Positions 1,831-62,519 of a DNA stretch of 64,000 nucleotides are shown here, piece by piece. This DNA is from Ophelia neglecta. Lineage: Eukaryota. The notes beneath the pieces are model-generated. The model was not told the origin of the DNA. It did no database searches and saw only the letters and a program-made list of their open reading frames with translations. The stretch covers positions 81,220,001 through 81,284,000 of the forward strand of contig OZ260663.1 in the NCBI GenBank assembly GCA_965285935.1, read 5' to 3'. Made by a program: the position numbers and the translations under genes. The stretch's first letter is position 1, and every line of letters begins with the position of its first letter.

Positions 1831-2342
1831 TCAATGTGTCGTCGAACTGGCTGTACTTGACGATGACGACGCCAGGGTCATTGCTGAGGAAGGTGACGTC
1901 ATTGGTTTGGCTATGTGTTGGGGTATCACGTGACGAGGGTAGGGGAACATCATGGCAGAGCCCCATGCCCCAGGATACTGCCCTGACCCTCTCATTGGCG
2001 ACGACGTTAGCCCGGATGATGACGTCACATTTGCCTCGCTCCCACTAACCCTATCATGGCGACGTTTCTCCGGAGAATCTTTACTCGCAACATCAGCAAG
2101 GGACCAAATTTTCGGTTTTGTACTGGGCGCCTTTGTCGTATCTTCCCTCTTGCTAACGGGGTCGATATTGGTGGTGGGTCTCATGTTTTCTGACCAAAAT
2201 GGCGGGTTTGTTGTTTGACTGTGATTGGAGCCAGACTGCGTCGTTCGGTTTGGTTGTCTACATTGATGATCATCGGAGGAGTCCGGCGTGGGTGTGACTC
2301 GCGACCTGGAGTCAGTAGAGCCGAGAGATTCTTGGACGGGAT
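1831..2342 (-). CDS. Irx: Irx exon 5 with IRO box and stop codon
   Basis: Acceptor ctttcttacag|AT, IRO box [11 protein letters not shown], tandem stops TGA TAA at 1833-1828. Confidence 0.92.
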
Positions 2343-14952: not shown

Positions 14953-15079
14953 ATGGACGACGATCCGCTATTCAATCTGGACACTGTCAGGGATTTTATC
15001 ATCTCTCGTGGTGGGAAAATCAGCAACCATCACCTAGTCACTCATTTCAAAACCTTCCTCAATGACCCAAGGAAGAAAG
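14953..15079 (+). CDS. sowah: sowah exon 1 (MDDDPLFNLDTVRDFIISRGGKISNHHLVTHFKTFLNDPRKK)
   Basis: aaacATGG start, donor G|gtgggt phase 1, SOWAH N-terminal domain motif. Confidence 0.9.
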
Positions 15080-24000: not shown

Positions 24001-27000
24001 TTTATTTGCCCTTGATGTTTTCTCTTTTTGATTGATTCTGTCTCCCTTAAACTGCTATAAGGTCATAAGTATGATGGGAATAGGAGGAAGGAAAGTGTAT
24101 TTTGAATTCATCAACACTTCATGTACATCTATGTTTATTACATAAATTTGGAGACCAGTAAAAGTAATATTGTATTGTACATTTCTTGTTCATAAAATAT
24201 CAACATGAAAAAGTTATGATCATTGTTTGTACATAAAAAATACCACTGTAAAAAAGTACATAAAAATGATATACATTAGTGTTTAGTGTGAGCTTCGAGT
24301 TCTTCTGACTAACCCATTAACTAACCCATTAACTTCCTTTACAATTTACAAGCTTATTGTCTCGTAACCCATTGTTTATTGTTGTTTATTATTTAAAGGT
24401 ATGTTTTTTTATTTTTTCTACATTTTTTCAGCCATCACCCAGTAAAGACGACGATGACAATCATTCTCAATCCAGCGTGGCTATCACTGTAAGTGAATAC
24501 TACTAGGCAGCCGCATGTAGCGAAGAAATAAATTGAATATATATTAGTGGCTGGAATTTGAGATAAGGATATGCCGATCTACTTGTGCAATTATATTTTA
24601 TTCATAACTAGCTACATTGCTGAATAGTCTGTTTATATGAAATGTTCATTGCAGAAATCAATTTATCTTTTTTTTCTAGTATTTATTCTCAAAGTGTCAC
24701 TGCCTTTTATATATTAATATTTCGTTTAACTTTCTTCCAGCTGGATGAGACAGAACGTCAATGGATGCTGATCTCGGCTGCAGCTGACTACCAACCAATG
24801 GCTAAACTCCTGCTAACTCACCCGCACCTCATCAAAAGAAAGGTGTGATAATATGTTATAAAAAGCTATATATCGTAGACTCTCCACCACCTGCTCTATT
24901 CTGCACACATGTAGTATTCATTTAGTGACAAATTCACATTCCAAATCACCATTTTCGGGTATATATGTTTGCTAGCAAGTCTTTAAAATGCTCATTATCC
25001 TTATGAAACTCACCAGTTGCGTTGATGGTGTTGCCAGATCTTTGAAAGAAATAAAATTGCAATTCTGACCACTTTGAATGACATCAACAAGCTTTAGAGG
25101 GATATGTGGTCAACCTTCCATTGACATTGTCAGGTACAAATTGAATCTTTTTCACGGGGTGATAAGTGATTTCGACTAACGTTTAAGTCTTCTCACCTGC
25201 TGTCATTGTAGTACACCACAAATATGTGTGTAGCGGAAAATGTGGTCCCCATTATTAGATTTGGTAGCTATGGCCGTGTCGCTAGGTGTGGAGGATCTTT
25301 GTTTGGGGGGGGGACCCTTGGTGGTGTAAAATTAGTATATTTATGTCAGAGATTAGCTTACAATTGCCATAGATCATTGCAAGAGGTGTATTTGCATGTT
25401 TAGTACCTATGACATCCCTCGGAAGTCATTTTAGGTGGCTATAAACCAGATATCATTGGACACCTTAAGCTACGCCAGTCAATGCACCAACACGATTGGG
25501 GCATAATTCCCCATTGGTCGTCTGCCTTTGCCTGATCTAAGTTTAATTTATTTCCTCTCATAATTCAGCCATTTCAATCTTTCAGCATTATGGCAATTTT
25601 GTTTGACTTTTGAAATGGATACAGCCGTTTGTGTTGTGTTCAATAAGCGTGCTTGCTTTTCGCCAGAAACCTAATATGACTTTTATTCTCTTCGCCCCTT
25701 TCATGTGCCGCTGTACTCTTTGTGCCGATGTGCTGTCACATTCAACAGGATTTCATGTCGGTAAGTCGTACTCACCAAATCAATTGTAGCCATTTCATTT
25801 AGAGGTGTGAACTGATACAAGAGAATGACTCGAAGCCATGATGAGGATTTTGTGATTCACCCAAGTCACTTTGTGTTTGCTCGCTCGGCTAAGCTGCCCT
25901 ATTTATGCACGCACAGGCTACTGTTGGCAACACGAACTTTTAAATCAAAATTTAATTTACTATAGATAGCTTACAGCCTGTGGTCATGACTTCAAGCGGA
26001 TAAGGACATGTATGCCTTTAATAAATTATTTATGCTTTCTATGACTCGGAATTTGAAGTCATTGTAGGAGAGTTTTTCACTGAGGGAAACTATCAGACTA
26101 GCGTAGCCAAAGGCAGAGATTTAGTGTGTGAACTGTGCATGATAGCCAAGCAAAACCAATCATTGATTGATTAGGGACAATTAATAAAGACCGCTAATGA
26201 AGGATATTATTGACAAGGCTTAATTATCATTTGTTAACCAGAGAAGCATTATAGAAAGCACTTCTCCCAGGGACAGGTTAATTTTGTTTCACTTTAAAAG
26301 CTTAATAGAGTGTTTAATTCAGGCAGTAATTTGAGCTGTCAAGAGGCAGGCCTGCTATTTTCAGCTGCATAATAAGAGCTCAATTATGCATTTAACCAAG
26401 CTGCAGGCATTGCAAGCATTCCTCCCAGTTGTCTCATTCACCCTTTAACCAGAACAATGGCTAGGGCTTTTTGTTTGCTTATAATCATTGACCATTCCAA
26501 TGAACAATTTAACTACAAATACACACGCAAAGATATCTGCTTTGATTATGGCCAGTAATGTGATTTGACCATTGTTCTAATTGTTTTCTGTTTTCTTTCC
26601 TTGCCCCTCCTACTGTGCCGTTGTCCTGCCTGGGATTTGATGGCTTCCCTGCCCTACCATCGTCTGACCTGCCTCAATGAAGGGGGTAAGTCATAGCTCT
26701 GCTTAATTACCTCTAAGTGCTTAATTATAACTTATCCCTCAGAAGCATTGCCGGAGATTTGAATCGCTATCAATCATCGGCCGCCATTGTTTTGCCGCTG
26801 TGCCCTGTCAGTGATTTCATATCTGGTGAAAGGGGAGAAAATAATCACATAATTTCATGCTCGGAGCATGTTACCGAGCCGAGCCTGCAGACGGGAAAGT
26901 GGCGGGCTGAAATGTTAGCCAAGACGAGCATTGTCGCCCTGACACAGCTTATGTTTTTGATCAATGTAATTAAGGGGCGATTTTGTTGTGTGCCTTTTAA

Positions 27001-30000
27001 GAAGCACTCTCTTACAGATTGATTTTCAGCTGACGCGTCAATATTGGTGTGCTAATATTCTCTTTAATGGATGTAGAAATCAATGATACTTCCACCTCCC
27101 CACCTCATTTACATGTTCTAGGATTTGTCTGGCATAATTTTGACGGACTATAGGCTAGTGAATGTTGGTCAGTCTTTGTGCCGAGTACGGTATGATAATG
27201 AAAGAAACTGTTTCTATTCTCGATGTCTACTTTAACAAAGTGGGTGGCGTTCGAAAAGCAAAAGTGTCGCCGCGGTGGCCACAGACTTTACAATCGCCCG
27301 GCCGAAATCAATAATGTTTGAAAGCCTAGTTGTAAACATGTGTATTCAAATATGAAATACTGCTAGGAATAATATTCAATTAACTGCCTCACAACGGCAA
27401 TGGAGACTGATTACATTGGGAATCTGTGCTCTCCAAACAATACACGTGTCAGACCACGTCCGGAACACAACAATTTGGAGTCGATCCACCCCGGCCGTTT
27501 GCTTATTGATTGCCGAGTAATATCGCCGATCACTTTTCACGGGGAAAATACAATAATTTAGAGGCTTAGAGTAATATGCGCTCATCAATATGCATACAGT
27601 GTGTGCCTTTTATCATCGCAGATTGCATGCAGTGTCGGGGCGATTTGGACTATAACAGGATTACTCGGTAGATTTGGCCCGATATATTGTGCTAACACTT
27701 TGTGCTCTAGAAGCCGATGCCTGTCAGACTTGGTCAGAATACTACCTAGAGCTGTTCTGGCCTTGTTAAGCTTGGCTAAACCCCTCCCCAATGATATTTG
27801 AGAAATAAAACGTTGGTGTCAGAGGTGTCACTACCCAAGTGAGTTGACTGGATGAGTGGGGAGTTAAGATCCCCGATCTCCACTGCCACTAAGTCCACAT
27901 TATGATATATTGGGTCGCCCGTTAGGGCATTCTGAGGGTGACAGATCGCGCCCACAGATATGAAGGGGGATCTGGAGATTTGACAATAACCAATAAACCC
28001 TCCATATTGCTCAGCCACTGGAATGACAATCAGCTATCTAATTGATATCCATTCACTGCCCACCTGACCTCCGTCTGACAATACACGACAGACACCAGCT
28101 CAATCTGGGACTGATCAAACACATAACTCACTGACAGACACCAACTCGATCTTACACAAATCAACCAAACACCATCCTCCTTGAAGAAATCAAAATATCA
28201 CGTCTGCTGCTCTTTGTCTCAAAAGCCTATTAAATTCCTTTTGTTTGATTGAATATGTATTTTTGTAGTTATAAGTAGACCAATGGTATTTTAATAATGA
28301 AAAGATATGTTTGACAATAATATTTTGCATGAATATGTAGTTTCTTGATATATAAATGTTAATAGCTACTCTCATTGTGTCTATTACTTATTTCCCACCA
28401 TGTTGCTGCCTCTTGTGCCTGTGCTGTGATGTGCTGCCACCTGGTAACCTAACTGTGCATAACTTCTGTGGCCATTCACTCAACCTACAGTTTGTAAGTA
28501 TCTATCTCATTATTTGTCTAACAGCTAACAGTAGACTGGTAGTTGCAAATGGAAATATGTAATATTCCACACCAATATAATACTATGAGTTGGTATTTGG
28601 TTTTTATTCAGCATAGTAACATCTTATCATTAATAAAAAAAGCTCTTTCATGTCAGTTTTATATGAAGATAAGGTTTGAAAATCTAAACATGTCATATGA
28701 AGTTCTTAATGGTGGTATCGTTGTTGACATGTATATAAATCATGTAGAAGTAAGTATGAAGTGTATCTCCAGATGTTTCACACATCTTCACTGGTGTGTT
28801 GGACTGGAGGACAGGATTTTGACAAGGGTGGGTTTCTTTACATCACAGGAAGGGTATGAGATGGGTACCCCCTCCCTGAGGAGAGTCTGGTAGCCTAAGA
28901 CCCCCTCCTGGGACAGGGCACACATCCCTCTCCCTGGGGAAACCCGAGAGGCGGGAGGAATTTATAGAAAGAAAAAAGGGGCCCCTGACCTTCCTGTGTC
29001 TCTCTAAATTTGTCCTGACCCCCCTGCCCCCTCCTAAATGTGCCAGTATCAATATCCAAACCTTCAAGTGGAGGTTTAACTTGTTGGTGAACTTGTTAGA
29101 TAGCAGATGCCTTGTGTATGTCAGCACTAGCGTTTTATCCAAACGTAGATTGTCATGTTTGTGTCTAGGCATTCTGTCATCGCCATCTCTTAGCCCGCTC
29201 TCTTACACGGAATTACAAAATCTTCTCCGGATTTGATTTCCCAACAAATAGCTGACATTCTGCCCTCCACCGTCTCAAGTCAGCAAAACTGGCAACAATG
29301 GCAAAAGTGTCCGACAACAGCCCGGTGTATTGGCCCATCTTTTATCGCCATTGGAGTAAGGGCACTATCAGCGTGGATGTAGCAGTATATTCCCCCAGGG
29401 AGAGCCTTATCAGTTTTTCGATTTGTATTGTATAAGAAGTGCGGTGATCTTGAGAGAAAGGTGGTGTTTGGGGACATGAAGCAGACTGGATGATGTACAT
29501 GTAAGAAGCTGTTTAATGGCGGGGTAGTGGTGGTTGCTTGTAGTTTTGGGCTGTTGACATTGGTCTTCATGTCTGTCAGCTCCGCCGAGACACACTGTTT
29601 GTGTTTATACAGACAGTGTTTATCTAGTGGGTAATTAGAATAAACCCGCCAAGCCTCCAGTTTGAGATGGAGTTTGAGATGGGAGTCCTCGAGCCTGCCT
29701 CAAGCCTGCCTGGGCCGTGTGGCTGATATTACCCTCTTCCCCTAAGTGTTTTCCAACCCTAGGTGTTGGTTTATTTGGTGAAGACTTTACAGGTTTTCTT
29801 GCCATGTTTACTCGCCCTGTTTTATGGCTCCATCGGCAGTTTAGTTATCAGGCGGTTGGCACTAAAATGGAGAGCCTCCAACCTGCCGATTGCTAGTACC
29901 TGTTGAGTGAAATATGTGAGAAAACCTGAATGTTAATTGTAGAATGTGGCAGAGGAGTAAGATTAAACAAGCCAACCAAGAAAAAAATGAATTAAGATAA

Positions 30001-45000: not shown

Positions 45001-48000
45001 CTAACCATGTTTCTAGCCATCTCCTGGATTGTATCTGGCAGATGGAGAGGAGAATGTGTGCTATGCATTCTGCATTTAATACCTTTGTCACATTGAATTC
45101 CCTTCATTATATCAAATCTCTTATAACATTTTGTTACTAGTATACTTTTAGAGGCTTGGGTCACATAAAAATTGTTATTTCACTACTTTAACAAGTATGG
45201 GCATATTTTGTGAAATATCTGTAGATATTAATTTATAATGTTAATATGAATTCTTGATGAAAATGAATGAAGTTTTATTAGGTAAATGATGTCTTTTATT
45301 GATGACAGGCCTGTATATATCTTTGACTTTCTTTCCTCCCTTGATGTAGTTCTTGTCCCATCTCTGTTGTAGAACTTTAGTGTTGGAAATTCACACCGGG
45401 TGGTTACAGTCCCGGCAATGTTAGGGAAAAATTCCACCGCTATATCCTGTTGATCTCATTCAACTAATATGATGTTAGCATTGAGCAAGCTGTCAAGCCG
45501 GGGTGTGCCTGTATATCTTAGATGTTAATTTAATTTGCAGAACTTAAAGACTTGCGTAGCCCTTTGACACCTTGATTAACTTCTTAATTCAGCTGGGTCT
45601 CGGTGCCAATCAGCTCGGCTTGTCAGAAAAAAACCTCGGCGGCAGCGACATTGATCAAGATATGAGGAACTCGGCGTGGCGTTGTAAAACACCGCCGCCG
45701 AATTCATTTGGTATTCATGATAGCCGTGCACAATCATCCATTTGAAAAGATGATGACTTAGTATGGCTTAGTTATGATTGACATTCTAATAAAAGGCATG
45801 TTGAAGCTGACTTGTGAAATTGTGGTTAATCCCGGTATTACAAGAGAGGGGTTCTTGGTACCCAGCGCAGGTTTGCCCAAATCCGTCTGGGGTTATTCAT
45901 GTTAATACCCATCTAACTCTTGGAGATGAAATTAATCAAATATTGGTTCTAATATGTCAATGTGTCAAATTGCATTATATAAGCCTGTTTGGGATTTCAT
46001 GTCAGCTGCGTTTTTAGTTGGGCCGGCGGTTTTTTCCTACTGTTTAATTTCTTTGAATTACGGTGGAATGGAGTCTCGGGTTAGTTGTAAAAAGTATCTT
46101 GATTTGAAAGTGACGGGTCTTAATCCAAACTGATCAAATTATTTCCAGCATTGATTATAGTTTAATTATCTGATATGAATGATTTCTTCTATTTCAGTTG
46201 GTCAATGAATCTTCCTCATTGTGCCACCAAGTATTGTTCTGACATTTAATGTAATCTCTCGGGCTGCTCCATTCAGAGTTTCTTCTGAGCCCCGCCTTAC
46301 AAACATCCGTTTTTAGAAGCATTGTGTACTGCTGGCTGCCAGTTAATATACCCCTTTAGTGGGATTAAATGGCGTCGGCTGTGGGGCCATTGAGAGAGAA
46401 AAAAGGCAGACATGTACACACCTATGGCTATGAAAGCAGCACATTTTTTCTCCATTTTTGTTTTGTACCCCTTCTCTGATGTCCCTGTTCAAATGCCTTG
46501 AATTTGAAAGGAATAGTAGAAAAGATAAAATGAAAATAATTTTTGTTTGTTTAAGGTTACAGTTTGGGATATGATAAAGTGATACTGCTGGTTAACATAA
46601 TTATATTTATTTTTTCAGACTGCACTCCACTGGGCAGCTAAGCATGGTAAACTGGAAGTGGTCAAACTGCTGTGTGGAACAACGGGGGCCGGAGTTAACG
46701 TGAGATCGGTGAGTAGTATGGGGACCAATGCCACTCCCTGGTCTGTTTTGTACCTCAGGTTTTATATGAACACAAATGTGCTGAAGTAGAATGATTCTCA
46801 GTGGTGCTGCCCGCTTTAACTGTTGTGATCTGTCAGTTGAATAAACCACACATATGAAATGAGACTGTGTCATTTGAAGCCGACCTCCTCCCCATCTCTG
46901 GCTAAAGAGTGCAAGCCATGAGGAGGGTCAACTTCAAGGGTCACAGAGTCAGATTATGACTCGTGGCCTCCTCAGAGGGCAGTCCCACTGATAAAAGTTC
47001 TAACCTATATTAAATGAAGACTCCAAACACGAGAAAAAGGTGACAGAAAACAGGGGGGCGATTCTTGGGTCTAGTAATTAGTTGTACTACGACTACTACG
47101 TACTATATCCATGGGGTTTTCTGTCCAATACCAAAGTGCAGATTGTTATATAACAATAGCACATTTACTATTGCTTTTGCAACATTTTAGACAAAACTAT
47201 TTTAACTCTTTGTAGAACCAGGTGTATTGAAGTTCTGTTGTTAAAGAATTGGTTGTAGGTTGGTTGTAAACAGTTTAATAGGTTGTTAATTAATAAGTTA
47301 TGATCTACCTAATAGTTATACAAGTTATTATTGACACAGTTATTATTATTAATGTTTTAGAAGTACTGTTTATATGACTGTTGGCTTGTAATAGGAGGTA
47401 CATCTTATATATGAAAGAATGAAAAATAAACACTGTTCTTCAGATTAGAAATTAACAATTAAATACTAGATGTATGGATATCATAATTATACATGTGCAT
47501 AATGGTATTCTATATTTTGTAAATATATTGAAATCTCAAGAATGGTTTATTCTCAAACTATATCCAGTAAAAAGGAAATACTAGAGTAAGTTATCAATGA
47601 GGAACCCTAATTATGTGTCTCTAGTCTTGTCCAGCTGACGGTGGATTAATCATAATCATATCAAATGTCCCAGAATTCATTACAAGCTCCAACACTTTTA
47701 AACAAAACAATTTGGTCAGGATAATAGTTGACCCATATTGGTAATTTTGTTGTGCATATCAATGCACAATAAATTATTCCTTGATTAAGATGCATATGGG
47801 CTGTTGTCAGTTTATGGGGCTGAATCACACAGGGATGAACACCAGTTTATCACAATAATTATCTTAAGGAGTTTGCAATCATGTAAGTGGACACATAGGA
47901 CAAATAAATCTAAAATGGACGCCCCGGACAGTTGACGGTGGAGATGAGCGTGGCGTTGCCTCCCACCATTGATCAAATCCATAAACATGTTCAGTCTGGG

Positions 48001-51000
48001 CTTCTAAAGGCTTATGATGTGCGGTGCACTCAGTCGAGAGGTCTACAATCATCAAAGCTACTCGGACAAGCTCAGATGCACATTCTACCAAAAGGAGATA
48101 GCGATTTCATTCCCCTTTTTGTGTCAGTACACAGCGAGTAAGCGGCATCAATAACATAATTATGTTGAGAAATCAGCTCGGAACGATGAAGTTTATTAAA
48201 TTCATGCTCGAGCAGGGGAAGTGTGGTCACGCGTTAACATTCATTTTGAGCTTCGGCCCCAATCGCTGCGCACTGCACTGCATATGGAAATTAAAAAGGA
48301 AGAGAGCCTCTTGCCGGCAATGGGAGAGGACCAAGCGTGAAATATGGAATGTCCGTCTCTTGTGAAGTGTGTCACATGGTGTGTACCCCAGTCAAATCCA
48401 GCGCATCCAAACTTAAAGATTAGACATTTTTCATTAAGGCTGATATGCTGGCGAAAGAATACAGAGTGACGTGGGCTGGTGAATTGGTTGTATGAATTGC
48501 GCAGCTATTACTAATCTTTCTTGTTTGGTTTCCAATGCGATCTGTCTTTGTTGCCTTTTTATCCACCCGGAACAAGCTTTCGGCTCAATGTCCGCAGGAT
48601 CGCACCAGTTTTTGTCACTGCGGCAAACTTTTGATGAGGTTCACTAGTCTGTGAGCTTTGCGTCTGCTAGCAAGATTAATGTAGATATCATATCTAATGT
48701 GTCCAGTCGTAATGGAGGGTGACTTACTGGAATTGACTTAATGGCTAAAAAACAGATATTGGGTAGGAAGCACGGTGGCCTATGAAATGGGTTTTTGCCT
48801 GTATGATCTAAGGGTGTATCATTACTCGGTTAAGGTTGAGCTCGCTTCATTCCCGATACAAGCCGGCTGGCTGTAATAGCCACTCGTAGTAGGCTTCTCA
48901 ATCAGTCTCACATGGGCACTCGATAGCCAAGAGCGGCAATCCCAGCCCTGCTTGTCAAAGATATTGAAAACCCTTGTCGAAATTGTAGGCATTGTCCTCT
49001 CTGCATTGCTGCCTTGTTAAATTGATTACTGGAGGAGACTTAGAAACAGCTTCGGCAATGTGTCTTGTTTTTGTGCAAGCTGAAAGTTACACTTGCCTAA
49101 ACATGTCTTTCGATCATTTACATTCGCAAATAGGGGTTCTTTTAGGTCTGCGACACAAGAACGATGTGTTTCATTTGGAAAAGTATCCATAAAACCAGTG
49201 TATGCCATTTTATCGTCAGCCAGGTGAATTCTAAATGCCCGGCTGGGAATAAAACCAGGATTTGGCATTAGGCAAAGAGCCGTGGAATGGAATAAAATGG
49301 AGATTTGGCATTAGGTAAAAGGCGGCCGATTGCATTGGGGGAGCAGAAGGTCTGCCCAGAATAATCATATAGTTAAGTCTGGCTTTGTATCTGCGAATCA
49401 GCACGTGGCCCCACTGAGGGACATAAGACAATTTGTGTCCTGACAATTGCACATCTCTGGGCCAGGCTCCAGTGACCAGAGTAATCCCATCAGTTATCAA
49501 CTCTCAAATACACTGCTCCTTCAATGCGAGCGAGTAATGAGTCGCAGCGATTCTGCTATAATCTAGCCTATTAAATTCCTCTAAGCAGGATGTCGGACAG
49601 AGAATTACATTGTCCGATGAAGAAAACTGCGGAAGTTATGTCTCCCAACTGCCATCAGTACATGGGACTGCAATTGGCAAGATAATATTCAAAGAATTAA
49701 CAAATGTTTAAGTGGCTTGGTATTGCCGATAGTTGGGCCCTGAATGGCGTCTTAATCTGAGGGGCCCAGATGCGCAGCGCTTGTGGCCTTTCACGTGTCA
49801 TTGATCATGTAGGGCTAATGGCTGTTACGGCCTCACCTTGAGCCACGGCTGAGGAAATGAACAGCCATGTTCGCTCGGCACAAACAAAGTCCCCATCACA
49901 TGTTCTGAGCCGCTATCAAAGTGGCCTCGACATTTGTCAGACGTTGAAAATAGTCCGGAAATGGAGCTTGGCTCCTACCACGCTAAAACCTGTCATTGTT
50001 GGTCTCCGCTGGAGAAAGTCTGCCACATCTCGGTAACTCAAGCAAATTTGTACAAAATGGCACAAAAAAAGTTATCGTTAGCCTACAGTGGATGTGTCTA
50101 GAGCAATCCACAAGGTTTATGATGTCTTAAAACAAAGAAAAAGCACCTCCATGAAATTACATGCCAGCCTCCCATTCTGATATTGTGGTTAATTCCCCAG
50201 TCCCTGGCAATGTCGAGATCGCAGATACCCAATCATGTAAATTACTGTCAGTTTTACCTCAGCACTATTCATTACTGTTATGTAAATTAAATTTGGATGT
50301 GTTTATAGGGCAGTTTATTTAGCAGTACAAATTTACATATCTATGAGGAGAAACAGTCGCGCGATGGGATTAAGTTCACTTAAGTTGCCAGCATGTTTAG
50401 TAAACTGATGTCTTCATAATTGTCAGGTGGCGTTTAAGATTGTCACTTTAAATGTGTTACATCAGAACGTGTCAGTCGAGCTGTCAACCCTGGCATTGCT
50501 CCATGACTCCAGCGACAAGTGATATGCAAAACCAGTCATTAACATCCCGCTGAATCAGGGATAAAATCACAATATGGTCCATCGGTGGGTGGACCTTGGC
50601 GGCCCCGGGGAAATTCCTTTGTGCCCAGATTGTCTCAGATATATTCATGATGAAAAATGGCTTGAAAAGTGAGCCGGTGTATTACACCATCATAACACAA
50701 GGGCCTCGGCAGATGGGAGTTTGTTAGGCTTGTTGTTGACAAATCTGACAAGGTAATGGTGAAACTAACCATGTACCTCTCGCCGAATGTCTCCAAAAAT
50801 CTTGTTTTGTCTGCGTGTTGGGGGAGGGGGGAAGATGCTACAGCTGATAAATAAAGCTAGGCATCTTCATAACAAAAGCATTTTCCATAGATAACAAGAG
50901 ATAGTCAGGGTTTTATTTTTGGAGGGCCACTAAGTGTATACAATTCAAATAAGAATATTGGCACTATTGTTCATTTAACACTGGTATTAGAGGGTCGTAA

Positions 51001-54000
51001 TCCACTTTTTATTTGCCCGGTTTGGCCATTTTCACGGAGGCAGCCTGGGTATTGAGACTCTAATAGGATATTCAACACACACTTGCCTGGCTCAGCGGGA
51101 CGAAATACAATGCTGAACGGTCAAGTTGATTATTCTACTTGATTTCACACAAATGAAAATATTTTGAGAGGCATTATTTGGCAGCAGTGGGTGAGAGGGC
51201 AGTTGGGTATTATCCTGGCCTACAATGGCTAAGGGTTTAATTGGAATCGTTTGGTGGAGTGGGGGACCCTGCTGGGAACCTGCCTCTCCTAATCATGCCA
51301 CCATCAGAATTAGCCAAACACTGTGTTGGTGCTCACTGGGCGGTGAACTGTTTGCAGATTTCTGAACCCTGGCTTGTTAGATTGCTTATTTAAGTAAATT
51401 GACTGTTGTAAACAATAGTGTATCCAGTAGAATCCACAACTTATGTCTGTCAGTGTAGCTACATGTATGTAAACATAGCAGAAATACTATTCAAGTCAAG
51501 GTCTAGACTGTTTCAATACCCTGTGTTTAGTTCTATTAAATTCTAATAAATATATATAATGATTTTTTTTTTTTTTCATGTTCTGCTGATATGTCTGGTT
51601 GTGCCTGACAGCATGTGAGTATTTAACCAGTAAACAGTTCATAAAGGTTTGCGAGCCAAGTGGAAATAGAGGAAAGGGGATGACTGCTTGGAGTTATACT
51701 GTTTAATACACATGTATAATATGTGCCTTGTTGATAAAGAATTTAATACTTTTATAATTACATAAATACTTATCATTTATATCTCTAATCTGACACTATA
51801 TATTATTTTTGATAGATATTATTTTCATATCAAAGTCAATAAAATATGTGTTTTTTTCCACTTATTCGGCAAGTGGCACTTATTTGACCGAAGTTACACC
51901 ATCAAAGACTATAACCTGCAGATGTAATTTAGCCAATCCATTTCATGCTATTGATTTTATATTACGCCATTTTGCACCAGTGCCGCTAGACGGGTAAACT
52001 CAATTGAACTACTATCTCAAAATCATGGTTTCATCCAAAAACCACTATTGTGAATCGAATCTCCTGATCTTTTTCTGAGAGCTTCAATTCAGCATTTTTC
52101 CGTTATGAGAATCATGAGGTCAGTGAGAAGAGAAGATATTGACATTTCTCGCCGTTGATTTCCAGGCAAATCTGCGAGTTTCTGTCCTAAATCCTATCAG
52201 TTCCAGTTGTCTGGCTTTCAAGTCTCCTGGAAGCATTCATCAGTGTTTTGTATTTGTAAATCAGGTTGGAAACCGGTGTCTTTCTCATAAAACCTCATCT
52301 CCTTCATGCTCAACAGAGATTGGGCACCGGGGCAGAATGTGCGATAGTCGCAACTAAAAATTACATGAAACTGCAATTATTACTGGTTGTAAACATTCCA
52401 CTCATAGAATGTGCTGTCTTGTATCTTTTTCATATTGTCGCCCATTGTGCTGGTTGCTGAAATGGATGGTTGCCTTAGGGGGTAAGTGAAATTTCATCTA
52501 TAGCTCCGTTGTCACGTTCCTAATGATATTATTGGCCGATAGAAATGACAGATCATCACAGCCAATTATTACAGATTTCTCATGCATATGAAACGGTGAT
52601 ACCCCGGGCCCCGGCCACATCGACCAGCCATCACCGAGGGATAAAAAAAGATATTGAATGTCACTCACTGTCGGGGGAGGTTGGGGCCAGCGATAATGTA
52701 AAGGGCTTGGTCACAGGGCACTCTACATTCACCCATTCTGGCAGCCATTGTCTGCCCTTGGGCATCTGGGGCGGAGACTGGGCTCGGGTCGTGGACTCCA
52801 CGGCCTCCGAGGAAGCCCAGGAAATGAAGGCTCTGTGCCCAACACCTTCGCTCGAGTCGCGGGCAAAATTCGTTTCCTGTAGAACATGTGTAGGGAACGG
52901 AGCAATTTGCATCTCAACAAATGAAACTCGGACTCATCAGCAATAATCATGATTTAATGAGAGCTCTGCTGGCAAGTCCAAGATGAATGGGACATTACTG
53001 CTCTGGAGGAGGTGTGAAAATCTTGCCATTTCACTGCAGAATATTTCCATTAATTACCCAACTGTTCTGGTAGGGGGAGCCATACATGTCTTAACAAGGC
53101 TGCGTAAATCAAGGTGAGAAGCGGAGTGTGAGTCACCTAGACCCAGGCCCCTTCACTTCCACCGGCATTCTCTCCCCGGTTTGATTCATAATGCCATTCC
53201 TCCACAAGAGCTCTCCAGACCTCAAGCCCCCCACCTTTGATGCCGGATTGGTTATTAATTAAAATTAAAATCTCCAATGCTTTGATGAAAAGCCTCTGCC
53301 GCTAATGGGATTGAAAACAGTCGATAAATAGATGTTGATTGTTTTGGAGATATTGGTGTGGGTGGCCAGTGTGATGTTAATGGCCCCGTTTAACATAGTA
53401 GTAGACTTGGATGGTAATCACGATGATCTCTGGATAAACAGAACCAGGGTGGTCCGTCTGCAATTCAATAAGCTCTAATACACTTGATCAAATCTCATTT
53501 CATTTATTATTTATTAATTATAACCGCACAGAAGCTGTTGTACCGTAATGCTTCTAATAATGAACAGAAGCTGTTGTACCGTAATGCATCTAATGATTGC
53601 ACCATGTATAAATTCATACACTTTAGATTCATATCATTTTAATTATTGTTTTACCTATATTAATTTAACCCATCTAGTTATCCAAGTAACAAACATTTCT
53701 AATCGACCAGTAATAATTAATTGTTATTAACCTTAGTAGGTAGGTAATAATTAGTGCTATGACTGAGCACTGTCTGGGTGAAGGCAGGATACCCCATTAC
53801 AGTCAAGTCTATTTTTATTTGAAGATAAAACATGTTATTATAGTATAGTGAAGAGATTAATATAAAAGAATAACTCAAGACATTGGGAACAGAAATCACC
53901 AATTTCCAATATTTGTCTGCTAATAGGATTTGATAGAATAAAGAGTAATGTTCAGTTGCCTGCAATTTAGTTGCTTGCCATGATTTCTAGCTGAAACTTT

Positions 54001-57000: not shown

Positions 57001-60000
57001 GGCAAATTTGTCGGGAGAAAACTGATGTTTTACACGGGGGCCCTGGGCTTTGTGTCCATAGAGGGACCCCCCAGGTGCCCGGTACACACCCAAACCAATT
57101 TTGTTAATCTATCGGCCTCGTCGGCTGCCAGAATAAAACATTGTATTGACAATACACTCTGTTGTTTACGCCAAACGGAAACTAGAAACTTCTGTGTCAG
57201 AAACTTTTGTTCTTGACTTGTCATAACACATGCATATATATGATTTTGTGCTTGAAAGTATGCAAAACAAAACTTAAACTTGATTTCCCTGAGCAACCTT
57301 CGTTGTTATGGCTGCACCACGCAAACAGATAATGCCAGATGCGGAAAATGGATAATTAATGACTCTGTTAAACTTGATCATTAAATTCGCTAACTTTACA
57401 TTTTTTATACATAACTGATCACCTGTATTAAACGTAGGAAAAACAATGGGAGATGAAGTCATTAATTTTGATAAATTTTTATATTATTATTATTTTAAGA
57501 TGTGGCCTGTTCTCATAAATGTAGTATTCTTTTTGATCAGGCCAAACAGCCACTACCATGAAATAAAATGGCGCCTTGCTAAAATCAATTTTGTCAAATA
57601 TTTTGAAAAAAGTAAGGAAATGCAGGCATAATAATCAAATTAAGAACCTTAATTTCTTTCCCCATTTGTGGAAAGATAACTCAAATTTGAGAGGTATAGC
57701 CAAAATAGTTTAGGCCTGTAGGTGGAGGACAGGGCCTAACATTTGCCTAGGCTTGCCACGGCCTTGTCGTCTCAAGCTGTCAAAACTTGTGGTTTTCTTA
57801 CACTAGCTGCTAATCTGGGACAAGACAACCAAGTGTAGCCACTAAAAAGAAACTGGAGAGGTAAATGAATAGTCAGCCAACTGTAAAATAGTACGATGCA
57901 CACTTCAAAATAAGTGATTAGGCAATGGTTGGTTGCCATCAAGTAATTGTGTAACAACTGTGGTGGGACCACATACAAATTCAGATATGTTTACAAGACT
58001 GTTAGCAATACATCTCTCATGGTGTGTAACAAAACATAGCATGTTGGCGGAAAAAACCTGGTTTTGAATGATTCACGCTATATTTTATCGGTGTCTTTTG
58101 CCATATTATAACTTAGTTTTGTGGTTTAGTCATTTCCTAAACATTCTCTATGTGTCTATGCGTCTATACTTGCTCATGGCACATAAGTTCTATGCACAAT
58201 ATGTAGTTTGTCAGTTGGGAGTTTTATGAGATTTCCTGTGAGTATATCCCGAGCAGGGCCGTCGAACGATGATGCACAAGTTTGCCACACACATCCTGCC
58301 CGTTTACTCGTCGCAAACAACAAACAAGAACAACTGTTTTCTACTAATTTTACAAAATACCAAGTATCACAAGTATCACAACACAGATTAACAATCAAGT
58401 TGCCTGTAGATCAGACTCGGTTTAAACTGAAGACATTACACACCTTTAGCATGAGAAGGAAGTTAGTTTTAAACACCTCTGCCTTTTGCTTATTTCTAAA
58501 ACTGCAAGGAAGCGTAGCATGGAAAAAATGTTGGTCGTATAATTTTCTATGGTTTAAAATTGTATGTTGTTGATTTGACTTGGTGCCATTTAAAAAGGCA
58601 GAGCTCTCCACAAATGACCCACTGTTTATTTTTCTATAATAAATGACAAATTTTTAGGATTTATGTGAGAGTATTAGCACAACTTCTGCCAGAGTTTGTT
58701 AGGCCAGGGGCCAGGAACTGCTTGTTACCAATCTAGTGTACATGCTGTCTCTCCTATCTGTGGTCCCATCTTGCCTTTTTGACAAAAACCAGTGAAGGTA
58801 TGCATTATTGTCAGTAATAGGACAGGGTGTCAAACATGCTGCAGTCACTTAGCCCAAAATGAGGGGCATGCTGGACTGAAAAAGACAAATTATGGGGTGT
58901 AAAAATCAGACACATCAGCTACTGAATTGGAGAAGCCATAATTATTGGTTTGTCATTGTGTATTAGATTTTCGCCTGGGGTGGTGTCCTATTGTTGTCTT
59001 ACCACACCTGGGTATTAGGTAGGAGTTCACCACCAGGTTCTACCTGACAAACACACCCCTCTCAGGCATAGCTCGGCGCTGCCGTATTCATTTCACCGGT
59101 GATTACTGCGTTAAGGAGCTTTTTGTGTGTTCATTATCAGTAGGGCATTAATTCACATATGTGTTATTATGTCTTTCACAATGAAATTAGCAATCCCTTT
59201 ATTTAGATTTATTGCAGCAGATGGAGGCATACCCAATTAAGGGTCCCACTTTTTCCTGGATTTTTTCGCCAGGTTTTTTTCATTTTCACTCCTTGTTATT
59301 CTTCTTTTGTGGTCGTTAGATTCTTGATGAATTGCTACCCTCAGCAACCAGTGTGACCTAAACACTGTTTTTGCTGTACTCATTATTTAGCTATTCATCA
59401 CAGCAATAAAGAAGGTAAAATTAGCCTGATAGGGTAACCCTCCCACACTTGTCACCTCCATTATCATTCGCCACCACCAGGGAATTATTTGAAAATTAGC
59501 CAGAAGTTAAAGAACCTGACAGTGTATTTGCCAACAAATTTGACAGCTTTCTGAGTATTTGTAGCAACCCAGTCAAAGGGAATAAGCAAATTCAGGGACC
59601 CAGTCTAATTGACAGCTTGACACATCGACAAACGAATTAGGTCTAATTTGAATATTTTTTGATAAAGTTAAGATAGTCAATGTGCAGCAACTTCTGAAAG
59701 TCAGATTGGATGACAGACCTTGAAGGTGTCAAGTGCTATATTGGAAGAAAACGCATTCAGGTGCCCAGGCTTTGGCACCCTATCAATCAAGTTTGAAATT
59801 TTCAAAGGTCGCCTTTTTCACCGATTATCCAGCTACACATGAATTCGTTTAGAGATGCTTCTGATTAAAGTCAACAATTTCTTCTTACAGCTGTCTGCCA
59901 CTTAACAAGTTACCTGGCTACTGTTTAAAACCAAAACCAAGGCAAAATTACACCCAAGCAGCCAATCGCACGAGAAAAAATGTTAAGGGGCCGAACAGAC

Positions 60001-62519
60001 AGTTTAGAAATGATTCATTACTATTCAAAGCTTATTATGTTTTCTCCCAGATACAAATTGGTTTAAAGAATAAGTTGCTATGAGGTAACCAGGCCAGTTT
60101 CTTTCATCCGTAGGTGATATATTTGATTGGAGAATGTTAACATTTGTGGTTGCATTTTGTCCATCTGTTCAATGATCATAACCTTAATCAGGTTTGATTG
60201 AAATTCTAATCAGAATAAATGGCATTTTGATAACTGAATCATGCCAGTATTTTCTTTTTTGTTATATCTTCGGTTGTATTTAAATAATTGTTTTACCTTA
60301 ATATGAAATTTTAGCCAGAAAGCTTATAAAAATATTAGTTTTTTATTCCTGTTACTTTGGCAGCAATTGACTTTATTGTGATTGCGAGGTTGTTAAGCTG
60401 GTTTATCCAATAACTTATTGCAAGTTGCAAAAAGTGTCACCAGACAACAATATTATTACTGCGAGCATCTGTCTAGCATTACCAGTCTGACAAGGGTAGT
60501 CTTACTTTTTTCCCTGATTCCAACCACAAACAGTTTGCCTGCAACTATTGGAAAGATGTGGCTATTAGTTTGTCACCGAGAAAGACAAATGTTGTTGGGA
60601 CTCGGTTTAGAAGCTCGGATAGGGTAAACCCTAGGGGCATAGTGTCAAAAAGGCTTCCCCTCGGAGGGCCGCCAAACGGCATTGCAGTGCTGTGTTTTAA
60701 TTGAGTTGGACGGTGGTGGATGGCTACATTGTTTTTCACTTAGGTGTACACGGTTCCTATCAACACATTTGTGCACCGCCTGTTGTTTTTCTGTGAGTGA
60801 GAGCATTACGGTAGGAAATGGCGAAGCATCTGCCCTGAGTTGGCCTGTCAGTCATGGCATGTCAAAACATTAGTTACACACAAAAGCCATTACAGGGGAA
60901 TAGTCCTGCAGATGTATTGCCAGCTCCTTGTCAGCTGCAAAATGGCACAATGCCTCGCCATTGACACTACATAGATTGGCTTAATTGTAAGGAAATGAAG
61001 TGATTTTGTCTGCTGGTGGCTCTGAATTCATATTGCGAGATCTCTTCCTGATGTCTCCACTTTTCCTTCACCTGCAGACAATGGCTAGCAGGGTTCCCAA
61101 TAAAACTAGCTTGTATTGGAATTCTCTCCCATTCTCTGCTGCATCATGGGAAGTTTGTGAGAAAAGAAGTAATCTGTGATCAAATAAACTAGCTTAGACA
61201 TAAAAATAGAGCAGTTTCCATGGCAATCAGAAGTCAAAGCCTTGTTTTCCCTCCCAATTTTTTTCAGAATCAAAATGGGGGTGTTATGTAACCAGTTTCT
61301 AGGCAGGCTTAGACCAAGCCTTCTGCCACTTGTGTTTACACGTCTGCTCTGCCCCCATATGTCATTCCTGTGGAACCCTTGATAAAAGACCACTAAAAAA
61401 TGATCAAAATTGTGAAATAGGGTTTGCCATACATGCCATGTGTTTAGACCTCTGCTGAAAAGCCACTGCTCTTATGAGACCATTTATTTGGTGGTCTCTC
61501 TTGAGGGGTCCCACACTGTAGTGATAACTGACAGGGAGCTTGACCTACATGTTCAGGGTCAGATTTGTAATAATTATATATGTACTGAATTCTGCCTTAT
61601 TAATTTAGCAGCTGGAGGCTAGCAGTGTAACAGTAGCGTATAGATATGATTCCCATCTGACCTTACTTTTGACCTTGACCTACATTTTAATGGTTGAATC
61701 TCTAAATGATTACTTCTCTTGTTAATAGAAGCAAGAAATTCTTCATTTATGGGGTTGTTATTGTTGTTGTTTGGGGTTTTACGTTGCTTTCAACACTTAT
61801 CTGGTCATATCGCCATGGTGACTACTAGTGACAGTGGACTCAATGCCCTCTTTAGAGTGCTGCTTCACTAGAGTACCTGCCATAGACACCAGACAGGGAC
61901 CCCACCCAGTCACATTATACTGACACCGGGTTGATCAGTCTTCAGTCATTGGGAGCATATAGGAATCCATGTGCTGTGCATATTGTGGTGGTCTCAGAGT
62001 TGATCAGGACCTATCTTTAGTTTAGTGACCTTAGGTCTGACCTTGTTGGTAAAAATTCATTGGGTAAGGCACTGGTGACCTTAGGTCTGACCTTGTTGCC
62101 TAGAAAAACATTGGGTAGGGCAGTGTTGACCTTTGATCTGACCTTGTTTGACAGTGTTTACTATCACCTTCTACATGTTTGACCTTTTTTTCCAGAGTCA
62201 ATCAATGGGGTCCTTTCTCTTTTTCATTGTGGGGACAGGCACATTCATTTTTCTTCTTAGAATTGAATGAATTGAATCTACTCTAATCTAGGTTTTTTTT
62301 ATTGTAAAAACACAATTCCCCCTTTTGGGCATTGTCCTAATACGTAAAAAAAAACTTGTAAACCAAAGTTTTGTTCTAATGTCATTGATTTGTTAACAAA
62401 TTGACCTTTTTTCTGTTGCTAGTAATATTTTCCTGTCCTGTTTCAGGGTTATACACCACTACACTTGGCAGCAATGCAAGGTCATGAGGATGTGATTGAG
62501 ATCCTGGTCAATGCCTACA
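14953..62519 (+). CDS. sowah: Sowah (sosondowah) ankyrin-repeat protein, 5'-partial gene (13 exons in window including 5 microexons; continues past window end)
   Basis: N-terminal SOWAH motif (VRDFIISRGGKISNHHLVTHFKTFL...RQKFKTYVNTLSTVK...GEKLLVLKKKY), acidic/Pro linker, then LDETERQWM...[19 protein letters not shown]...[21 protein letters not shown] ankyrin repeats. All junctions are GT-AG and in frame. Adjacent to Irx, as is known for Sowah. Confidence 0.93.
15925..16010 (+). mobile_element. degenerate 5' fragment of a tRNA-derived SINE
   Basis: B-box-like gggttagaatccc followed by tcaaaccaaagac...ttcccctgccaggc, resembling marine-invertebrate SINE heads (recalled, not searched). Confidence 0.4.
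17320..17381 (+). CDS. sowah: sowah exon 2 (DTNRQKFKTYVNTLSTVKLDT)
   Basis: poly-T cag|AT acceptor, ACG|gtatgt donor, phase 1-0. Matches the family R..FK..VN....VK motif. Confidence 0.92.
17612..18358 (+). CDS. sowah: sowah exon 3 (SGEKLLVLKKKY plus acidic Pro/Glu-rich linker)
   Basis: cttcattcag|AGT acceptor, CCG|gtgagt donor, 747 nt, within ORF 17624..18448. Confidence 0.92.
20550..20731. mobile_element. MITE, Tc1/mariner-pogo-like, TA-flanked
   Basis: Imperfect TIRs tacagttgtccctgtgatg versus revcomp tagagtggtccctgcgatg, with internal gatgaagggacac-type subrepeats. Confidence 0.7.
20932..21042 (+). CDS. sowah: sowah exon 4 (VPSGAKQVVPVSVKDRAKHLNKITSESDLSASMIGKK)
   Basis: ttttttccag|GTT acceptor, AAG|gtattg donor, 111 nt, phase 0-0. 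Confidence 0.85.
21397..21510. repeat. 35-bp tandem repeat, about 3 copies
   Basis: actgagtctttctcagtgctcattcactaccaaga and variants. Confidence 0.85.
22137..22349 (+). CDS. sowah: candidate alternative (cassette or alternative first) sowah exon, 71 codons
   Basis: actaatcag|GAA...AAG|gtaatc, open and phase 0-0, coding-like composition in an AT-rich intron, but a weak polypyrimidine tract. Confidence 0.5.
24432..24488 (+). CDS. sowah: sowah exon 5 (PSPSKDDDDNHSQSSVAIT)
   Basis: ttttttcag|CCA acceptor, ACT|gtaagt donor, 57 nt, phase 0-0. Confidence 0.87.
24741..24842 (+). CDS. sowah: sowah exon 6 (LDETERQWMLISAAADYQPMAKLLLTHPHLIKRK)
   Basis: tttcttccag|CTG acceptor, AAG|gtgtga donor. Matches the SOWAH pre-ankyrin L...E..W motif. 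Confidence 0.92.
25749..25760 (+). CDS. sowah: sowah 12-nt microexon (DFMS)
   Basis: caacag|GATTTCATGTCG|gtaagt supplies the family motif DFMS. Confidence 0.92.
26683..26685 (+). CDS. sowah: sowah 3-nt microexon GGG (Gly)
   Basis: aatgaag|GGG|gtaagt after about 125 nt of AG-free pyrimidine/TGC-rich sequence. Supplies G of [10 protein letters not shown]. Confidence 0.85.
28491..28493 (+). CDS. sowah: sowah 3-nt microexon TTT (Phe)
   Basis: cctacag|TTT|gtaagt after about 120 nt AG-free with TGTGCY repeats and a CCTAAC branch-like site. Supplies F. Confidence 0.87.
30097..30232. repeat. local duplication, period 74 bp
   Basis: atccatttgttgaatggt(c/a)atagataggaataaactgtat occurs twice. Confidence 0.85.
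37500..38105. repeat. G-rich degenerate tandem array ending in two near-identical 97-bp units
   Basis: atcagccccctccaccaggtagagtggtggtctacc... at 37909 and 38006, related partial units at about 37691 and 37813, interspersed poly-G. Confidence 0.85.
38922..39102. mobile_element. MITE, Tc1/mariner-pogo-like, TA-flanked
   Basis: TIRs TA-CAGAGAAACCTG ... CAGGTTTCACTG-TA, internal repeated (G)ACCACCT. Confidence 0.8.
46619..46708 (+). CDS. sowah: sowah ankyrin exon ([30 protein letters not shown])
   Basis: tttttcag|ACT acceptor, TCG|gtgagt donor, 90 nt, classic ankyrin helices. Confidence 0.95.
51612..51614 (+). CDS. sowah: sowah 3-nt microexon CAT (His)
   Basis: poly-T...tgtgcctgacag|CAT|gtgagt supplies H of [10 protein letters not shown]. 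Confidence 0.87.
52479..52481 (+). CDS. sowah: sowah 3-nt microexon GGG (Gly)
   Basis: ttgccttag|GGG|gtaagt after about 70 nt AG-free with TGC motifs. Supplies the first G of HGGY. Confidence 0.85.
61367..61520. mobile_element. degenerate MITE of a related GACCAC-subrepeat family
   Basis: tgtggaacccttgataaaagaccac ... gtggtctctcttgaggggtcccacactgta imperfect inverted ends. Confidence 0.5.
61760..61940 (-). mobile_element. 5'-truncated SINE with conserved central domain (Meta/RUDI-like)
   Basis: Minus strand reads ccggtgtcagtataatgtgactgggtgg...agtgaagcagcactctaaa...gatatgaccagataagtgttgaaagcaacgtaaaacccc then a (CAA)n tail. Family assignment is from memory. Confidence 0.6.
62025..62150. repeat. 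51-bp tandem repeat, about 2.5 copies, TGACCT-rich
   Basis: gtgaccttaggtctgaccttgttg... repeated. Confidence 0.85.
62447..62519 (+). CDS. sowah: sowah ankyrin exon ([24 protein letters not shown])
   Basis: cctgtttcag|GGT acceptor, A|gtgagt donor phase 1, canonical GxTPLHLAA ankyrin consensus. Confidence 0.95.

What the first reader, a model, noticed from the sequence alone, without database searches (positions are those of the whole stretch)
24741..62519. Sowah ankyrin domain assembled through five microexons, four of them single codons
Seen: the ordinary exons end ...IKRK, resume TALHWAAKHG...VNVRS, then resume GYTPLHLAA, so residues are missing at both junctions. Between them, in the required order, lie cag|GATTTCATGTCG|gtaagt (25749), aag|GGG|gtaagt (26683), cag|TTT|gtaagt (28491), cag|CAT|gtgagt (51612) and tag|GGG|gtaagt (52479). 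Known: the spliced product KRK-DFMS-G-F-TALHWAAK and RS-H-G-GYTPLHLAA matches the SOWAH family ankyrin motifs (DFMSGFTALHWAAK, RSHGGYTPLHLAA). Consecutive 3-nt exons are near the lower limit of exon size and are usually missed by annotation pipelines. Inference: all five are phase 0, so any subset can be skipped in frame (up to 32 combinations), editing the ankyrin beta-hairpins one residue at a time. Caveat: Sowah microexons may already be noted in the Irx-Sowah comparative literature, so novelty needs checking.
Basis: partly seen in the sequence, partly recalled or inferred. Interest (0 to 1): 0.92.

Follow-up and report, generated by a model that had tools for sequence, protein, structure and literature searches.

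The report
Four single-codon exons in Sowah
Two loops of the ankyrin domain of this animal's Sowah gene are encoded by five tiny exons, four of them a single codon long; the layout is real, is shared with bony fish and a sea slug, and is often mis-annotated, but nothing yet shows that cells mix and match them.

Summary
The window holds an Irx homeobox gene on the minus strand and a Sowah gene on the plus strand. Between exon 3 (24741-24842), the first ankyrin exon (46619-46708) and the second (62447-62519) lie a 12-nt exon (DFMS) and four 3-nt exons (G, F, H, G). These four are the only AG-NNN-GTRAGT sites on the plus strand of all 64 kb. The chance of the whole ordered set is about 1e-11. The same 12+3+3 / 3+3 layout is present in two teleosts and in the mollusc Elysia, and the codons track each lineage's protein (Y for F, N for H). 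So the architecture predates the protostome-deuterostome split. Of 64 contiguous ORFs, from RNA assemblies or intronless copies, 63 carry all eight residues. Only 24 of 78 public gene models are complete at the first junction, and some errors are plain artefacts. The glycine of the second microexon is invariant. However, the five acceptors are UGC-rich with weak pyrimidine tracts, as in SRRM-dependent microexons, so regulated inclusion stays open. No RNA data for this species could be reached. I never searched a joined exon model.

The parts
1831..7127 (-). Neighbouring Irx (Iroquois/TALE) homeobox gene, coding pieces; context for the Irx-Sowah block
   Evidence: ORFs. The 4114-4572 ORF hits Homeobox_KN at 4e-18.
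14953..15079 (+). Sowah exon 1 (ATG at 14953; phase 0 to 1), N-terminal winged-helix part
   Evidence: Sequence. tblastn to P0042 and P0027, 48-58% identity.
17320..17381 (+). Sowah exon 1b (phase 1 to 0), encodes the ..QKFKTYVN.. segment
   Evidence: cag acceptor and gtatgt donor.
17612..18358 (+). Sowah exon 2 (249 codons, GEKLLVLKKKY then an acidic linker)
20932..21042 (+). Sowah exon 2b (VSVKDRAKHLNK motif)
24432..24488 (+). Sowah exon 2c (KDDDDNH..SSVAIT)
   Evidence: resembles Lingula P0007 just before exon 3.
24741..24842 (+). Sowah exon 3 (34 codons, ends IKRK); capping helices before the ankyrin repeats
25749..25760 (+). Microexon 1, 12 nt, DFMS, phase 0
   Evidence: Orthologous 12-nt DFTS exon in Austrofundulus, Coregonus and Elysia.
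26683..26685 (+). Microexon 2, 3 nt GGG (Gly, Ank profile position 2, invariant)
   Evidence: Orthologous GGG islands.
28491..28493 (+). Microexon 3, 3 nt TTT (Phe, Ank profile position 3)
   Evidence: Orthologous TTT in L004, L006, L007, L008 and Coregonus; TAT in Elysia.
46619..46708 (+). First ankyrin exon (30 codons, TALHWAAKHG...VNVRS), starts at Ank profile position 4
   Evidence: Ank, 5.5e-8.
51612..51614 (+). Microexon 4, 3 nt CAT (His)
   Evidence: CAC or CAT in the teleosts, AAT in Elysia.
52479..52481 (+). Microexon 5, 3 nt GGG (Gly, Ank profile position 1 of repeat 2)
   Evidence: GGG in the teleosts, GGA in Elysia.
62447..62519 (+). Second ankyrin exon (GYTPLHLAA..., phase 0 to 1); the gene continues beyond the window, with the next exon about 3.9 kb past its end
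   Evidence: Ank, 6e-8. Next exon at G000:C5:81287928-81288080.

Best explanation
This is the single-copy, intron-containing Sowah gene of an unidentified animal, next to its Irx neighbour. Seven introns cut a run of only 38 codons. That leaves a 12-nt exon and four 3-nt exons, which encode the loop residues before helix 1 of ankyrin repeat 1 (DFMS, G, F) and of repeat 2 (H, G). They are genuine exons that enter the main mRNA. The layout was inherited from the common ancestor of protostomes and deuterostomes. Other lineages have simplified it by intron loss: a 15+3 form, exon 3 fused through the Gly, or fully intronless copies. The likely mechanism is inferred, not shown. A 3-nt exon cannot hold U2AF/U2 and U1 at the same time. 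Each microexon would therefore be recognised first through its very strong donor (GTRAGT, extended to +7/+8 where the codon offers no -1 G). It would be spliced to the exon downstream, and its weak, UGC-rich acceptor would be used only afterwards. The domain would thus be assembled from 3' to 5'.
For: Shown. The exact sites are unique in the window, with chance about 1e-11. The same 12+3+3 / 3+3 islands occur in order in Austrofundulus limnaeus SOWAHB, except that no strong-donor Phe exon was found there. Its RefSeq product contains the residues. They also occur in Coregonus suidteri and in the mollusc Elysia marginata. In Elysia the five islands are the only stop-free AG-(3..18 nt)-GTRAG candidates in a 6 kb interval, and the codons switch to Y and N as in mollusc proteins. 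Four unnamed taxa have 15+3 or fused+3 forms. 63 of 64 contiguous ORFs, from RNA assemblies or intronless genes, are complete at the first junction. Microexon 2's Gly is invariant and microexon 5's Gly is at least 90% conserved. The residues lie in confident loops, block pLDDT 86-94, at Ank profile positions 1-3. There is no second Sowah copy or retrogene in the genome. Supporting the inferred mechanism: all five window donors are GTRAGT, against 4 of 8 ordinary donors of the same gene. +7/+8 reads AT in 8 of 11 T-ending 3-nt exons against 1 of 8 G-ending ones, p=0.02. Window microexon acceptors have 2.2 versus 0.43 UGC and a pyrimidine fraction of 0.56 versus 0.75, p<0.01. Published work links short length, a weak 3'ss, UGC and a strong 5'ss with downstream-intron-first splicing, and proposes steric exclusion of U1 and U2 (PMC10250204).
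Against: There is no transcript evidence from this species. In Austrofundulus the Phe exon was not found with a strong donor: there are two weak candidates, and the stretch contains N bases. Loci and taxa are few and related, so the donor and UGC statistics are not independent samples. For the non-window loci the strong donor was partly a search criterion. The splicing order is inference only.
Confidence: 0.82

Rival explanations
1. The microexons are real but regulated. Like SRRM3/4 (eMIC)-dependent microexons, they would be included in some tissues, such as neural or ciliated cells, and one or more would be skipped elsewhere, giving loop variants of the ankyrin domain.
For: Window acceptors show the published signature of such exons: UGC motifs near the 3'ss, weak pyrimidine tracts and strong donors (bioRxiv 10.1101/2024.09.17.613571; PMC10250204). 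Many RefSeq fish isoforms differ by exactly G, F, GF or all six residues at junction 1. An example is Micropterus salmoides X1/X2/X3 at 255/254/253 aa. All five exons are phase 0.
Against: Every contiguous RNA-derived or intronless ORF that covers the junctions is complete. Junction 2 is complete in 74 of 78 models although it also has two 3-nt exons. Some variant models are demonstrable artefacts (KSVS, DFTSVI). The skipped Gly is invariant in the family. UGC enrichment across all taxa is modest (p=0.09).
Confidence: 0.2
2. One reading: a combinatorial code in which any of the 32 subsets is produced and used.
For: Only the phase-0 arithmetic and the variety of predicted isoforms.
Against: As for the rival above. 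In addition, variation is concentrated at junction 1 and junction 2 is nearly fixed. Removing the invariant Gly or the aromatic residue from a conserved ankyrin loop is unlikely to be neutral.
Confidence: 0.03
3. Chance AG-NNN-GT matches: the protein of this species simply lacks these residues, or encodes them by shifted splice sites of the large exons.
For: 3-nt matches are individually cheap. About 2 AG-NNN-GTRAGT sites are expected per strand of the window.
Against: All four such sites carry the right codon in the right intron and order, with joint probability about 1e-11. The islands are conserved in fish, a mollusc and four other taxa. Extending exon 3 runs into a stop.
Confidence: 0.02
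4. The locus is a decaying parental gene whose function has passed to a retrogene, as reported for tetrapod Sowah, so the tiny exons are relics.
For: Retrogene replacement is documented for this family (recalled from Maeso et al. 2012, not read here). An intronless copy exists in another invertebrate (L003).
Against: Exon 3 is single-copy. No other locus matches the Sowah-specific parts of P0007. All 13 exons in the window are open, with canonical splice sites.
Confidence: 0.02

Closest known systems
Single 3-nt microexons in animals: mouse Ncam, Drosophila TnT and hth, cytohesin-1 GGG, MAP4K5, RPS24 (PMC8042270, PMC7392893, PMC6314551, PMC8632122, PMC11162997)
   Same: Same size (one codon), in frame, flanked by AG and a strong GT donor, conserved, and hard to map or annotate.
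   Different: Those are single exons and mostly alternative. Here two back-to-back pairs, plus a 12-nt exon, sit inside one small domain. They appear to be part of the main mRNA and are conserved between protostomes and deuterostomes.
SRRM3/4 (eMIC)-dependent neural microexons
   Same: UGC motifs near a weak 3' splice site, a strong 5' splice site, very short length, and location in surface loops of a protein-interaction domain.
   Different: Tissue-specific inclusion and SRRM dependence were not tested. Available mRNA-derived sequences all include the exons. The encoded Gly is invariant, which fits constitutive use better.
Conserved, mis-annotated plant microexon clusters (PMC8831610)
   Same: Tiny constitutive coding exons, sometimes adjacent, conserved over hundreds of millions of years. 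They are lost by intron loss in some lineages and are pervasively missing from annotations.
   Different: Different kingdom and genes. The plant work covers 1-15 nt exons, with adjacent pairs such as 5+12 nt. Runs of single-codon exons were not among the passages I read.
Recursive splice sites (AG|GTRAGT ratchet points in long introns)
   Same: An acceptor is followed almost immediately by a consensus donor inside long introns of a developmental gene block.
   Different: Three coding nucleotides remain in the mRNA. The sites also do not divide the long introns evenly: introns of 18.1 kb and 10.0 kb remain.
Irx-Sowah conserved gene block (Maeso et al. 2012, cited in PMC5010895)
   Same: An Irx homeobox gene lies next to an intron-rich Sowah gene.
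   Different: That work concerns enhancers in Sowah introns and retrogene replacement. I found no description of the microexons, but I could not read that paper.

Membership tests
SOWAH (sosondowah ankyrin repeat) family | N-terminal SOWAH winged-helix domain (Pfam PF25877) | tested here: inconclusive
   Exons 1, 1b and the start of exon 2 align to the N-termini of P0042 and P0027, which carry PF25877. A Pfam scan of exon 1 alone gave no hit.
SOWAH (sosondowah ankyrin repeat) family | Two ankyrin repeats with the LHWAAKHG and GGYTPLH signatures, preceded by the ..W.....LL..P.L helix exon | tested here: met
   Both ankyrin exons hit Pfam Ank, at 5.5e-8 and 6e-8. Exon 3 retrieves only Sowah relatives from 1.8 billion proteins.
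SOWAH (sosondowah ankyrin repeat) family | Physical linkage to an Irx homeobox gene | tested here: met
   The Irx coding ORFs on the minus strand end at 7127, about 7.8 kb from the Sowah ATG at 14953.
Coding microexon (30 nt or less; here 3 nt) | AG acceptor and GT donor flanking an in-frame codon that supplies a conserved residue | tested here: met
Coding microexon (30 nt or less; here 3 nt) | The same exon at the same position in orthologous loci | tested here: met
   Two teleosts, one mollusc and four unnamed taxa.
Coding microexon (30 nt or less; here 3 nt) | Presence of the codons in mature mRNA of this species | not testable with these tools
   The only runs found are DNA. Indirect support comes from teleost RNA-derived ORFs and a RefSeq product that contain the residues, while the loci encode them only as islands.
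SRRM3/4 (eMIC)-dependent microexons | UGC motif(s) close to a weak 3' splice site, with a strong 5' splice site | tested here: met
   Window: 2.2 versus 0.43 UGC per 45 nt, pyrimidine fraction 0.56 versus 0.75, and 5 of 5 donors GTRAGT.
SRRM3/4 (eMIC)-dependent microexons | Inclusion restricted to SRRM-expressing tissues and lost without the factor | not testable with these tools
   No RNA data were reachable.
Recursive splice site | Acceptor AG directly abutting a donor GT, leaving no exon in the mRNA | tested here: not met
   Three coding nucleotides lie between AG and GT, and they are needed for the conserved protein.

The most novel reading that the evidence does not exclude
The seven-intron, 38-codon layout is a bilaterian-old splicing device rather than a frozen accident. 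Its UGC-rich, weak acceptors would make the single-codon exons depend on an SRRM/eMIC-type factor. Tissues lacking that factor would then produce Sowah proteins with ankyrin recognition loops shortened by one to six residues. This would be an ancient, residue-by-residue tuning of a binding surface.
Probability: 0.15. Interest if true: 0.85.

Novelty: new member of a known kind. Interest (0 to 1): 0.6.

Why it matters
Single-codon exons sit at the physical limit of what a spliceosome can define. Four of them in one small domain, kept in place since before molluscs and vertebrates diverged, form a natural test bed for how such exons are recognised and why their introns are never lost. There is also a practical point. 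About two thirds of public Sowah gene models in the sampled set are wrong or incomplete at exactly these codons. Some invent residues from intron sequence. Sowah could therefore serve as a stringent benchmark for microexon-aware annotation, and comparisons of Sowah proteins need care. If inclusion proves to be regulated, this would be one of the oldest known microexon switches.

Tried and rejected
RNA evidence. The look-up of sequencing runs on exon 2 returned three runs of unknown kind. Read laying on 46560-52540 showed that they cover introns, so they are DNA, with no joints.

Literature. I could not fetch Maeso et al. 2012 by DOI, PMC id or PubMed id.

Locus look-ups. The look-up of encoding contigs failed for Lingula, Callorhinchus, Saccoglossus, Pomacea and Perca proteins. 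One locus came back without DNA.

Search technicalities. The first alignment was too diverse for the search for related loci. Two calls had frame slips that I corrected.

Organism identity. A COX1 fragment from the mitochondrial contig found only unnamed hits, and a findings search gave nothing. The organism remains unidentified.

Earlier notes. There are none near the window. Microexon notes elsewhere in the genome did not bear on this finding.

Ideas considered and rejected.
- Stepping stones for long-intron splicing: the microexons do not subdivide the 18 kb and 10 kb introns.
- Recursive splice sites: three coding bases remain in the mRNA.
- A relic of retrogene replacement: there is no second copy.

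Step left out. For the fold I used an orthologue, P0033, instead.

Full report
**What is in the window**

The window is G000:C5:81220001-81284000, from a 762 Mb animal genome. An Irx-type TALE homeobox gene lies on the minus strand at about 1.8-7.1 kb (Homeobox_KN 4e-18).

A Sowah gene runs on the plus strand from an ATG at 14953. I rebuilt its exons by reading splice sites and by tblastn with orthologues, one exon at a time:
- 14953-15079
- 17320-17381
- 17612-18358
- 20932-21042
- 24432-24488
- 24741-24842
- the five microexons
- 46619-46708
- 62447-62519

The next exon lies about 3.9 kb beyond the window end. All searches used single exons by reference.

**Check of the observation**

The pattern AG-NNN-GTRAGT occurs four times on the plus strand of the whole 64 kb. 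Those four sites are exactly the claimed GGG, TTT, CAT and GGG exons, in the right introns and order. The minus strand has one such site.

Within each intron there is one strong-donor candidate per required residue and a single DFMS candidate. From base composition, the expected counts are 0.016-0.038 per 3-nt site and 2e-4 for the 12-nt exon. The joint ordered probability is about 1e-11. Seven introns (906, 922, 1805, 18125, 4903, 864 and 9965 nt) therefore interrupt only 38 codons.

**Are they real exons?**

I could not get RNA from this species. The three runs found with exon 2 turned out to be DNA, because their contigs cover the introns. The comparative evidence is strong.

A search with exon 3 against 1.8 billion proteins found only Sowah relatives, and Lingula SOWAHC led to 120 family members. 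The evidence from individual loci:
- **Austrofundulus limnaeus SOWAHB.** The RefSeq product contains DFTSGF and HG. In the 49 kb locus these residues are absent from the ordinary exons. A 12-nt DFTS exon, a GGG, a CAC and a GGG island lie in order between them. The Phe exon was not found with a strong donor there.
- **Coregonus suidteri.** All five islands are present with canonical sites. The deposited model keeps DFTS but lacks G, F, H and G.
- **Elysia marginata (mollusc).** The five islands are the only stop-free AG-(3..18 nt)-GTRAG candidates in the 6 kb between exon 3 and the GYT exon. They read DFTS, G, Y, N, G, which are the mollusc versions of the residues. The first ankyrin exon falls in an assembly gap, and the deposited model skips it.
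- **Four unnamed taxa.** Three show exon 3, a 15-nt NFMNG exon and a 3-nt TTT exon. One shows exon 3 fused through the Gly, followed by a 3-nt TTT exon.
- **One invertebrate contig.** It carries an intronless C-terminal half.

The simplest reading is that the 12+3+3 / 3+3 layout is ancestral to protostomes and deuterostomes and has been eroded by intron loss in some lines.

**Are they always included?**

Among the 120 relatives, 41 of 42 ORFs called on contiguous contigs have the full first junction, and 41 of 42 the full second. These contigs are RNA assemblies or intronless genes. For the teleost-type sequences they must be cDNA, because the loci have many kilobases of introns there.

Only 24 of 78 gene models are complete at junction 1. 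Of the rest, 15 lack G, 8 lack F, 9 lack both, 3 lack DFxS and G, and 3 lack all six. Junction 2 is complete in 74 of 78.

Inside ten clusters, all 22 further contig-derived members that cover the junction are complete. By contrast, the NCBI members include DFTSF, DFTSG, DFTS, KSVS and DFTSVI. The last two look like the translated first six bases of the intron, which would make them alignment artefacts. This is an inference; I did not read those loci.

The Gly of microexon 2 is invariant in a 28-sequence alignment, and the Gly of microexon 5 is at least 90% conserved. Pfam places the first ankyrin exon from profile position 4 and the second from position 2. So G and F are positions 2 and 3 of repeat 1, and the last microexon is position 1 of repeat 2. 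In an AlphaFold model of an orthologue, the eight residues lie in confident loops just before helix 1 of each repeat.

The proposed 32-way skipping has no positive evidence.

**How it probably works (inferred)**

All five window microexons have GTRAGT donors, against 4 of 8 ordinary exons of the same gene. Across taxa, 3-nt exons ending in T cannot pair their -1 base with U1. They carry A at +7 in 11 of 11 cases and AT at +7/+8 in 8 of 11. G-ending exons carry AT in only 1 of 8 (p=0.02). This extends complementarity to the 5' end of U1 snRNA (established knowledge). TTT rather than TTC is used in all six strong-donor Phe exons.

The window's microexon acceptors differ from its ordinary acceptors. 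They have 2.2 versus 0.43 UGC motifs in 45 nt, and a pyrimidine fraction of 0.56 versus 0.75 (p<0.01). Across all taxa the contrast is weaker.

Published work associates very short length, a weak 3' splice site, a nearby UGC and a strong 5' splice site with removal of the downstream intron first. It proposes that U1 and U2 cannot assemble together on such exons (PMC10250204; bioRxiv 10.1101/2024.09.17.613571).

I therefore propose that each single-codon exon is first joined to the exon downstream of it and only then receives the upstream exon. The loops would thus be assembled from 3' to 5'. The same features leave open an SRRM-type dependence, and hence tissue regulation. I rate that at about 0.2.

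**What it is not**
- Not chance.
- Not recursive splice sites, because three coding bases remain in the mRNA.
- Not a device for subdividing long introns, because 18 kb and 10 kb introns remain.
- Not a relic of retrogene replacement. Exon 3 is single-copy, and no other locus matches the Sowah-specific parts.

**Novelty**

Three-nucleotide exons are known as isolated cases, for example Ncam, TnT, hth, cytohesin-1, MAP4K5 and RPS24. Conserved, mis-annotated microexons are well described in plants. At least one RefSeq fish product already contains the Sowah codons, so databases partly hold the fact.

No paper among about 8.4 million full texts combines Sowah with microexon terms. I could not read the original Irx-Sowah paper.

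I class this as a new member of a known kind. It is notable for its extreme form: two back-to-back pairs of single-codon exons in one domain. It is also notable for its age. The organism itself could not be named.

Noticed in passing
window 10181-11113: A 50-bp tandem repeat, 18.7 copies at 95% identity, lies in the intergenic space between Irx and the Sowah start. It produces the repeated small ORFs seen on both strands there.
   Followed up: partly
L003:3001-4014: An unnamed invertebrate 5.2 Mb contig encodes the whole C-terminal half of Sowah (337 aa, including DFTSGH and TNGGYT) as one uninterrupted ORF. This is an intronless or retrogene-like copy outside tetrapods.
   Followed up: partly
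Public gene models P0116, P0113, P0042, P0118, P0247-P0249, P0036/P0037/P0075: Specific annotation errors at these codons. Coregonus suidteri lacks G, F, H and G. Elysia skips the first ankyrin exon, which lies in an assembly gap. Saccoglossus lacks DFxSG. Callorhinchus X2 lacks F and H. Epinephelus has VS in place of HG, and Poecilia and Siniperca have VI in place of GF; both look like translated intron starts.
   Followed up: yes
window 26683 and 62447 (Ank profile positions 1|2): The intron between Ank profile positions 1 and 2 sits at the same place in both repeats: S|G in repeat 1 and G|G in repeat 2. The other introns are offset. This may be a trace of the repeat duplication.
   Followed up: no
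L005:46935-46970 and L016:14620-14655: The two teleosts share flanking sequence around the last GGG microexon, approximately gggaaact..ag|GGG|gtaggta, including the unusual gtaggt donor.
   Followed up: no
window 46560-46759: read laying gave zero depth over the first ankyrin exon in all three DNA runs, while the flanking intron was covered.
   Followed up: no
G000 contigs C9, C1 and C2 (for example C1:19833471-19842920): Dozens of very long uninterrupted ankyrin-repeat ORFs, with open frames of 2000-4000 aa, cluster on a few chromosomes of this genome.
   Followed up: no
G000:C223:4697-6037: The mitochondrial contig is present in the assembly. COX1 reads through 8 TGA codons, as expected for an animal mitochondrial code.
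   Followed up: partly
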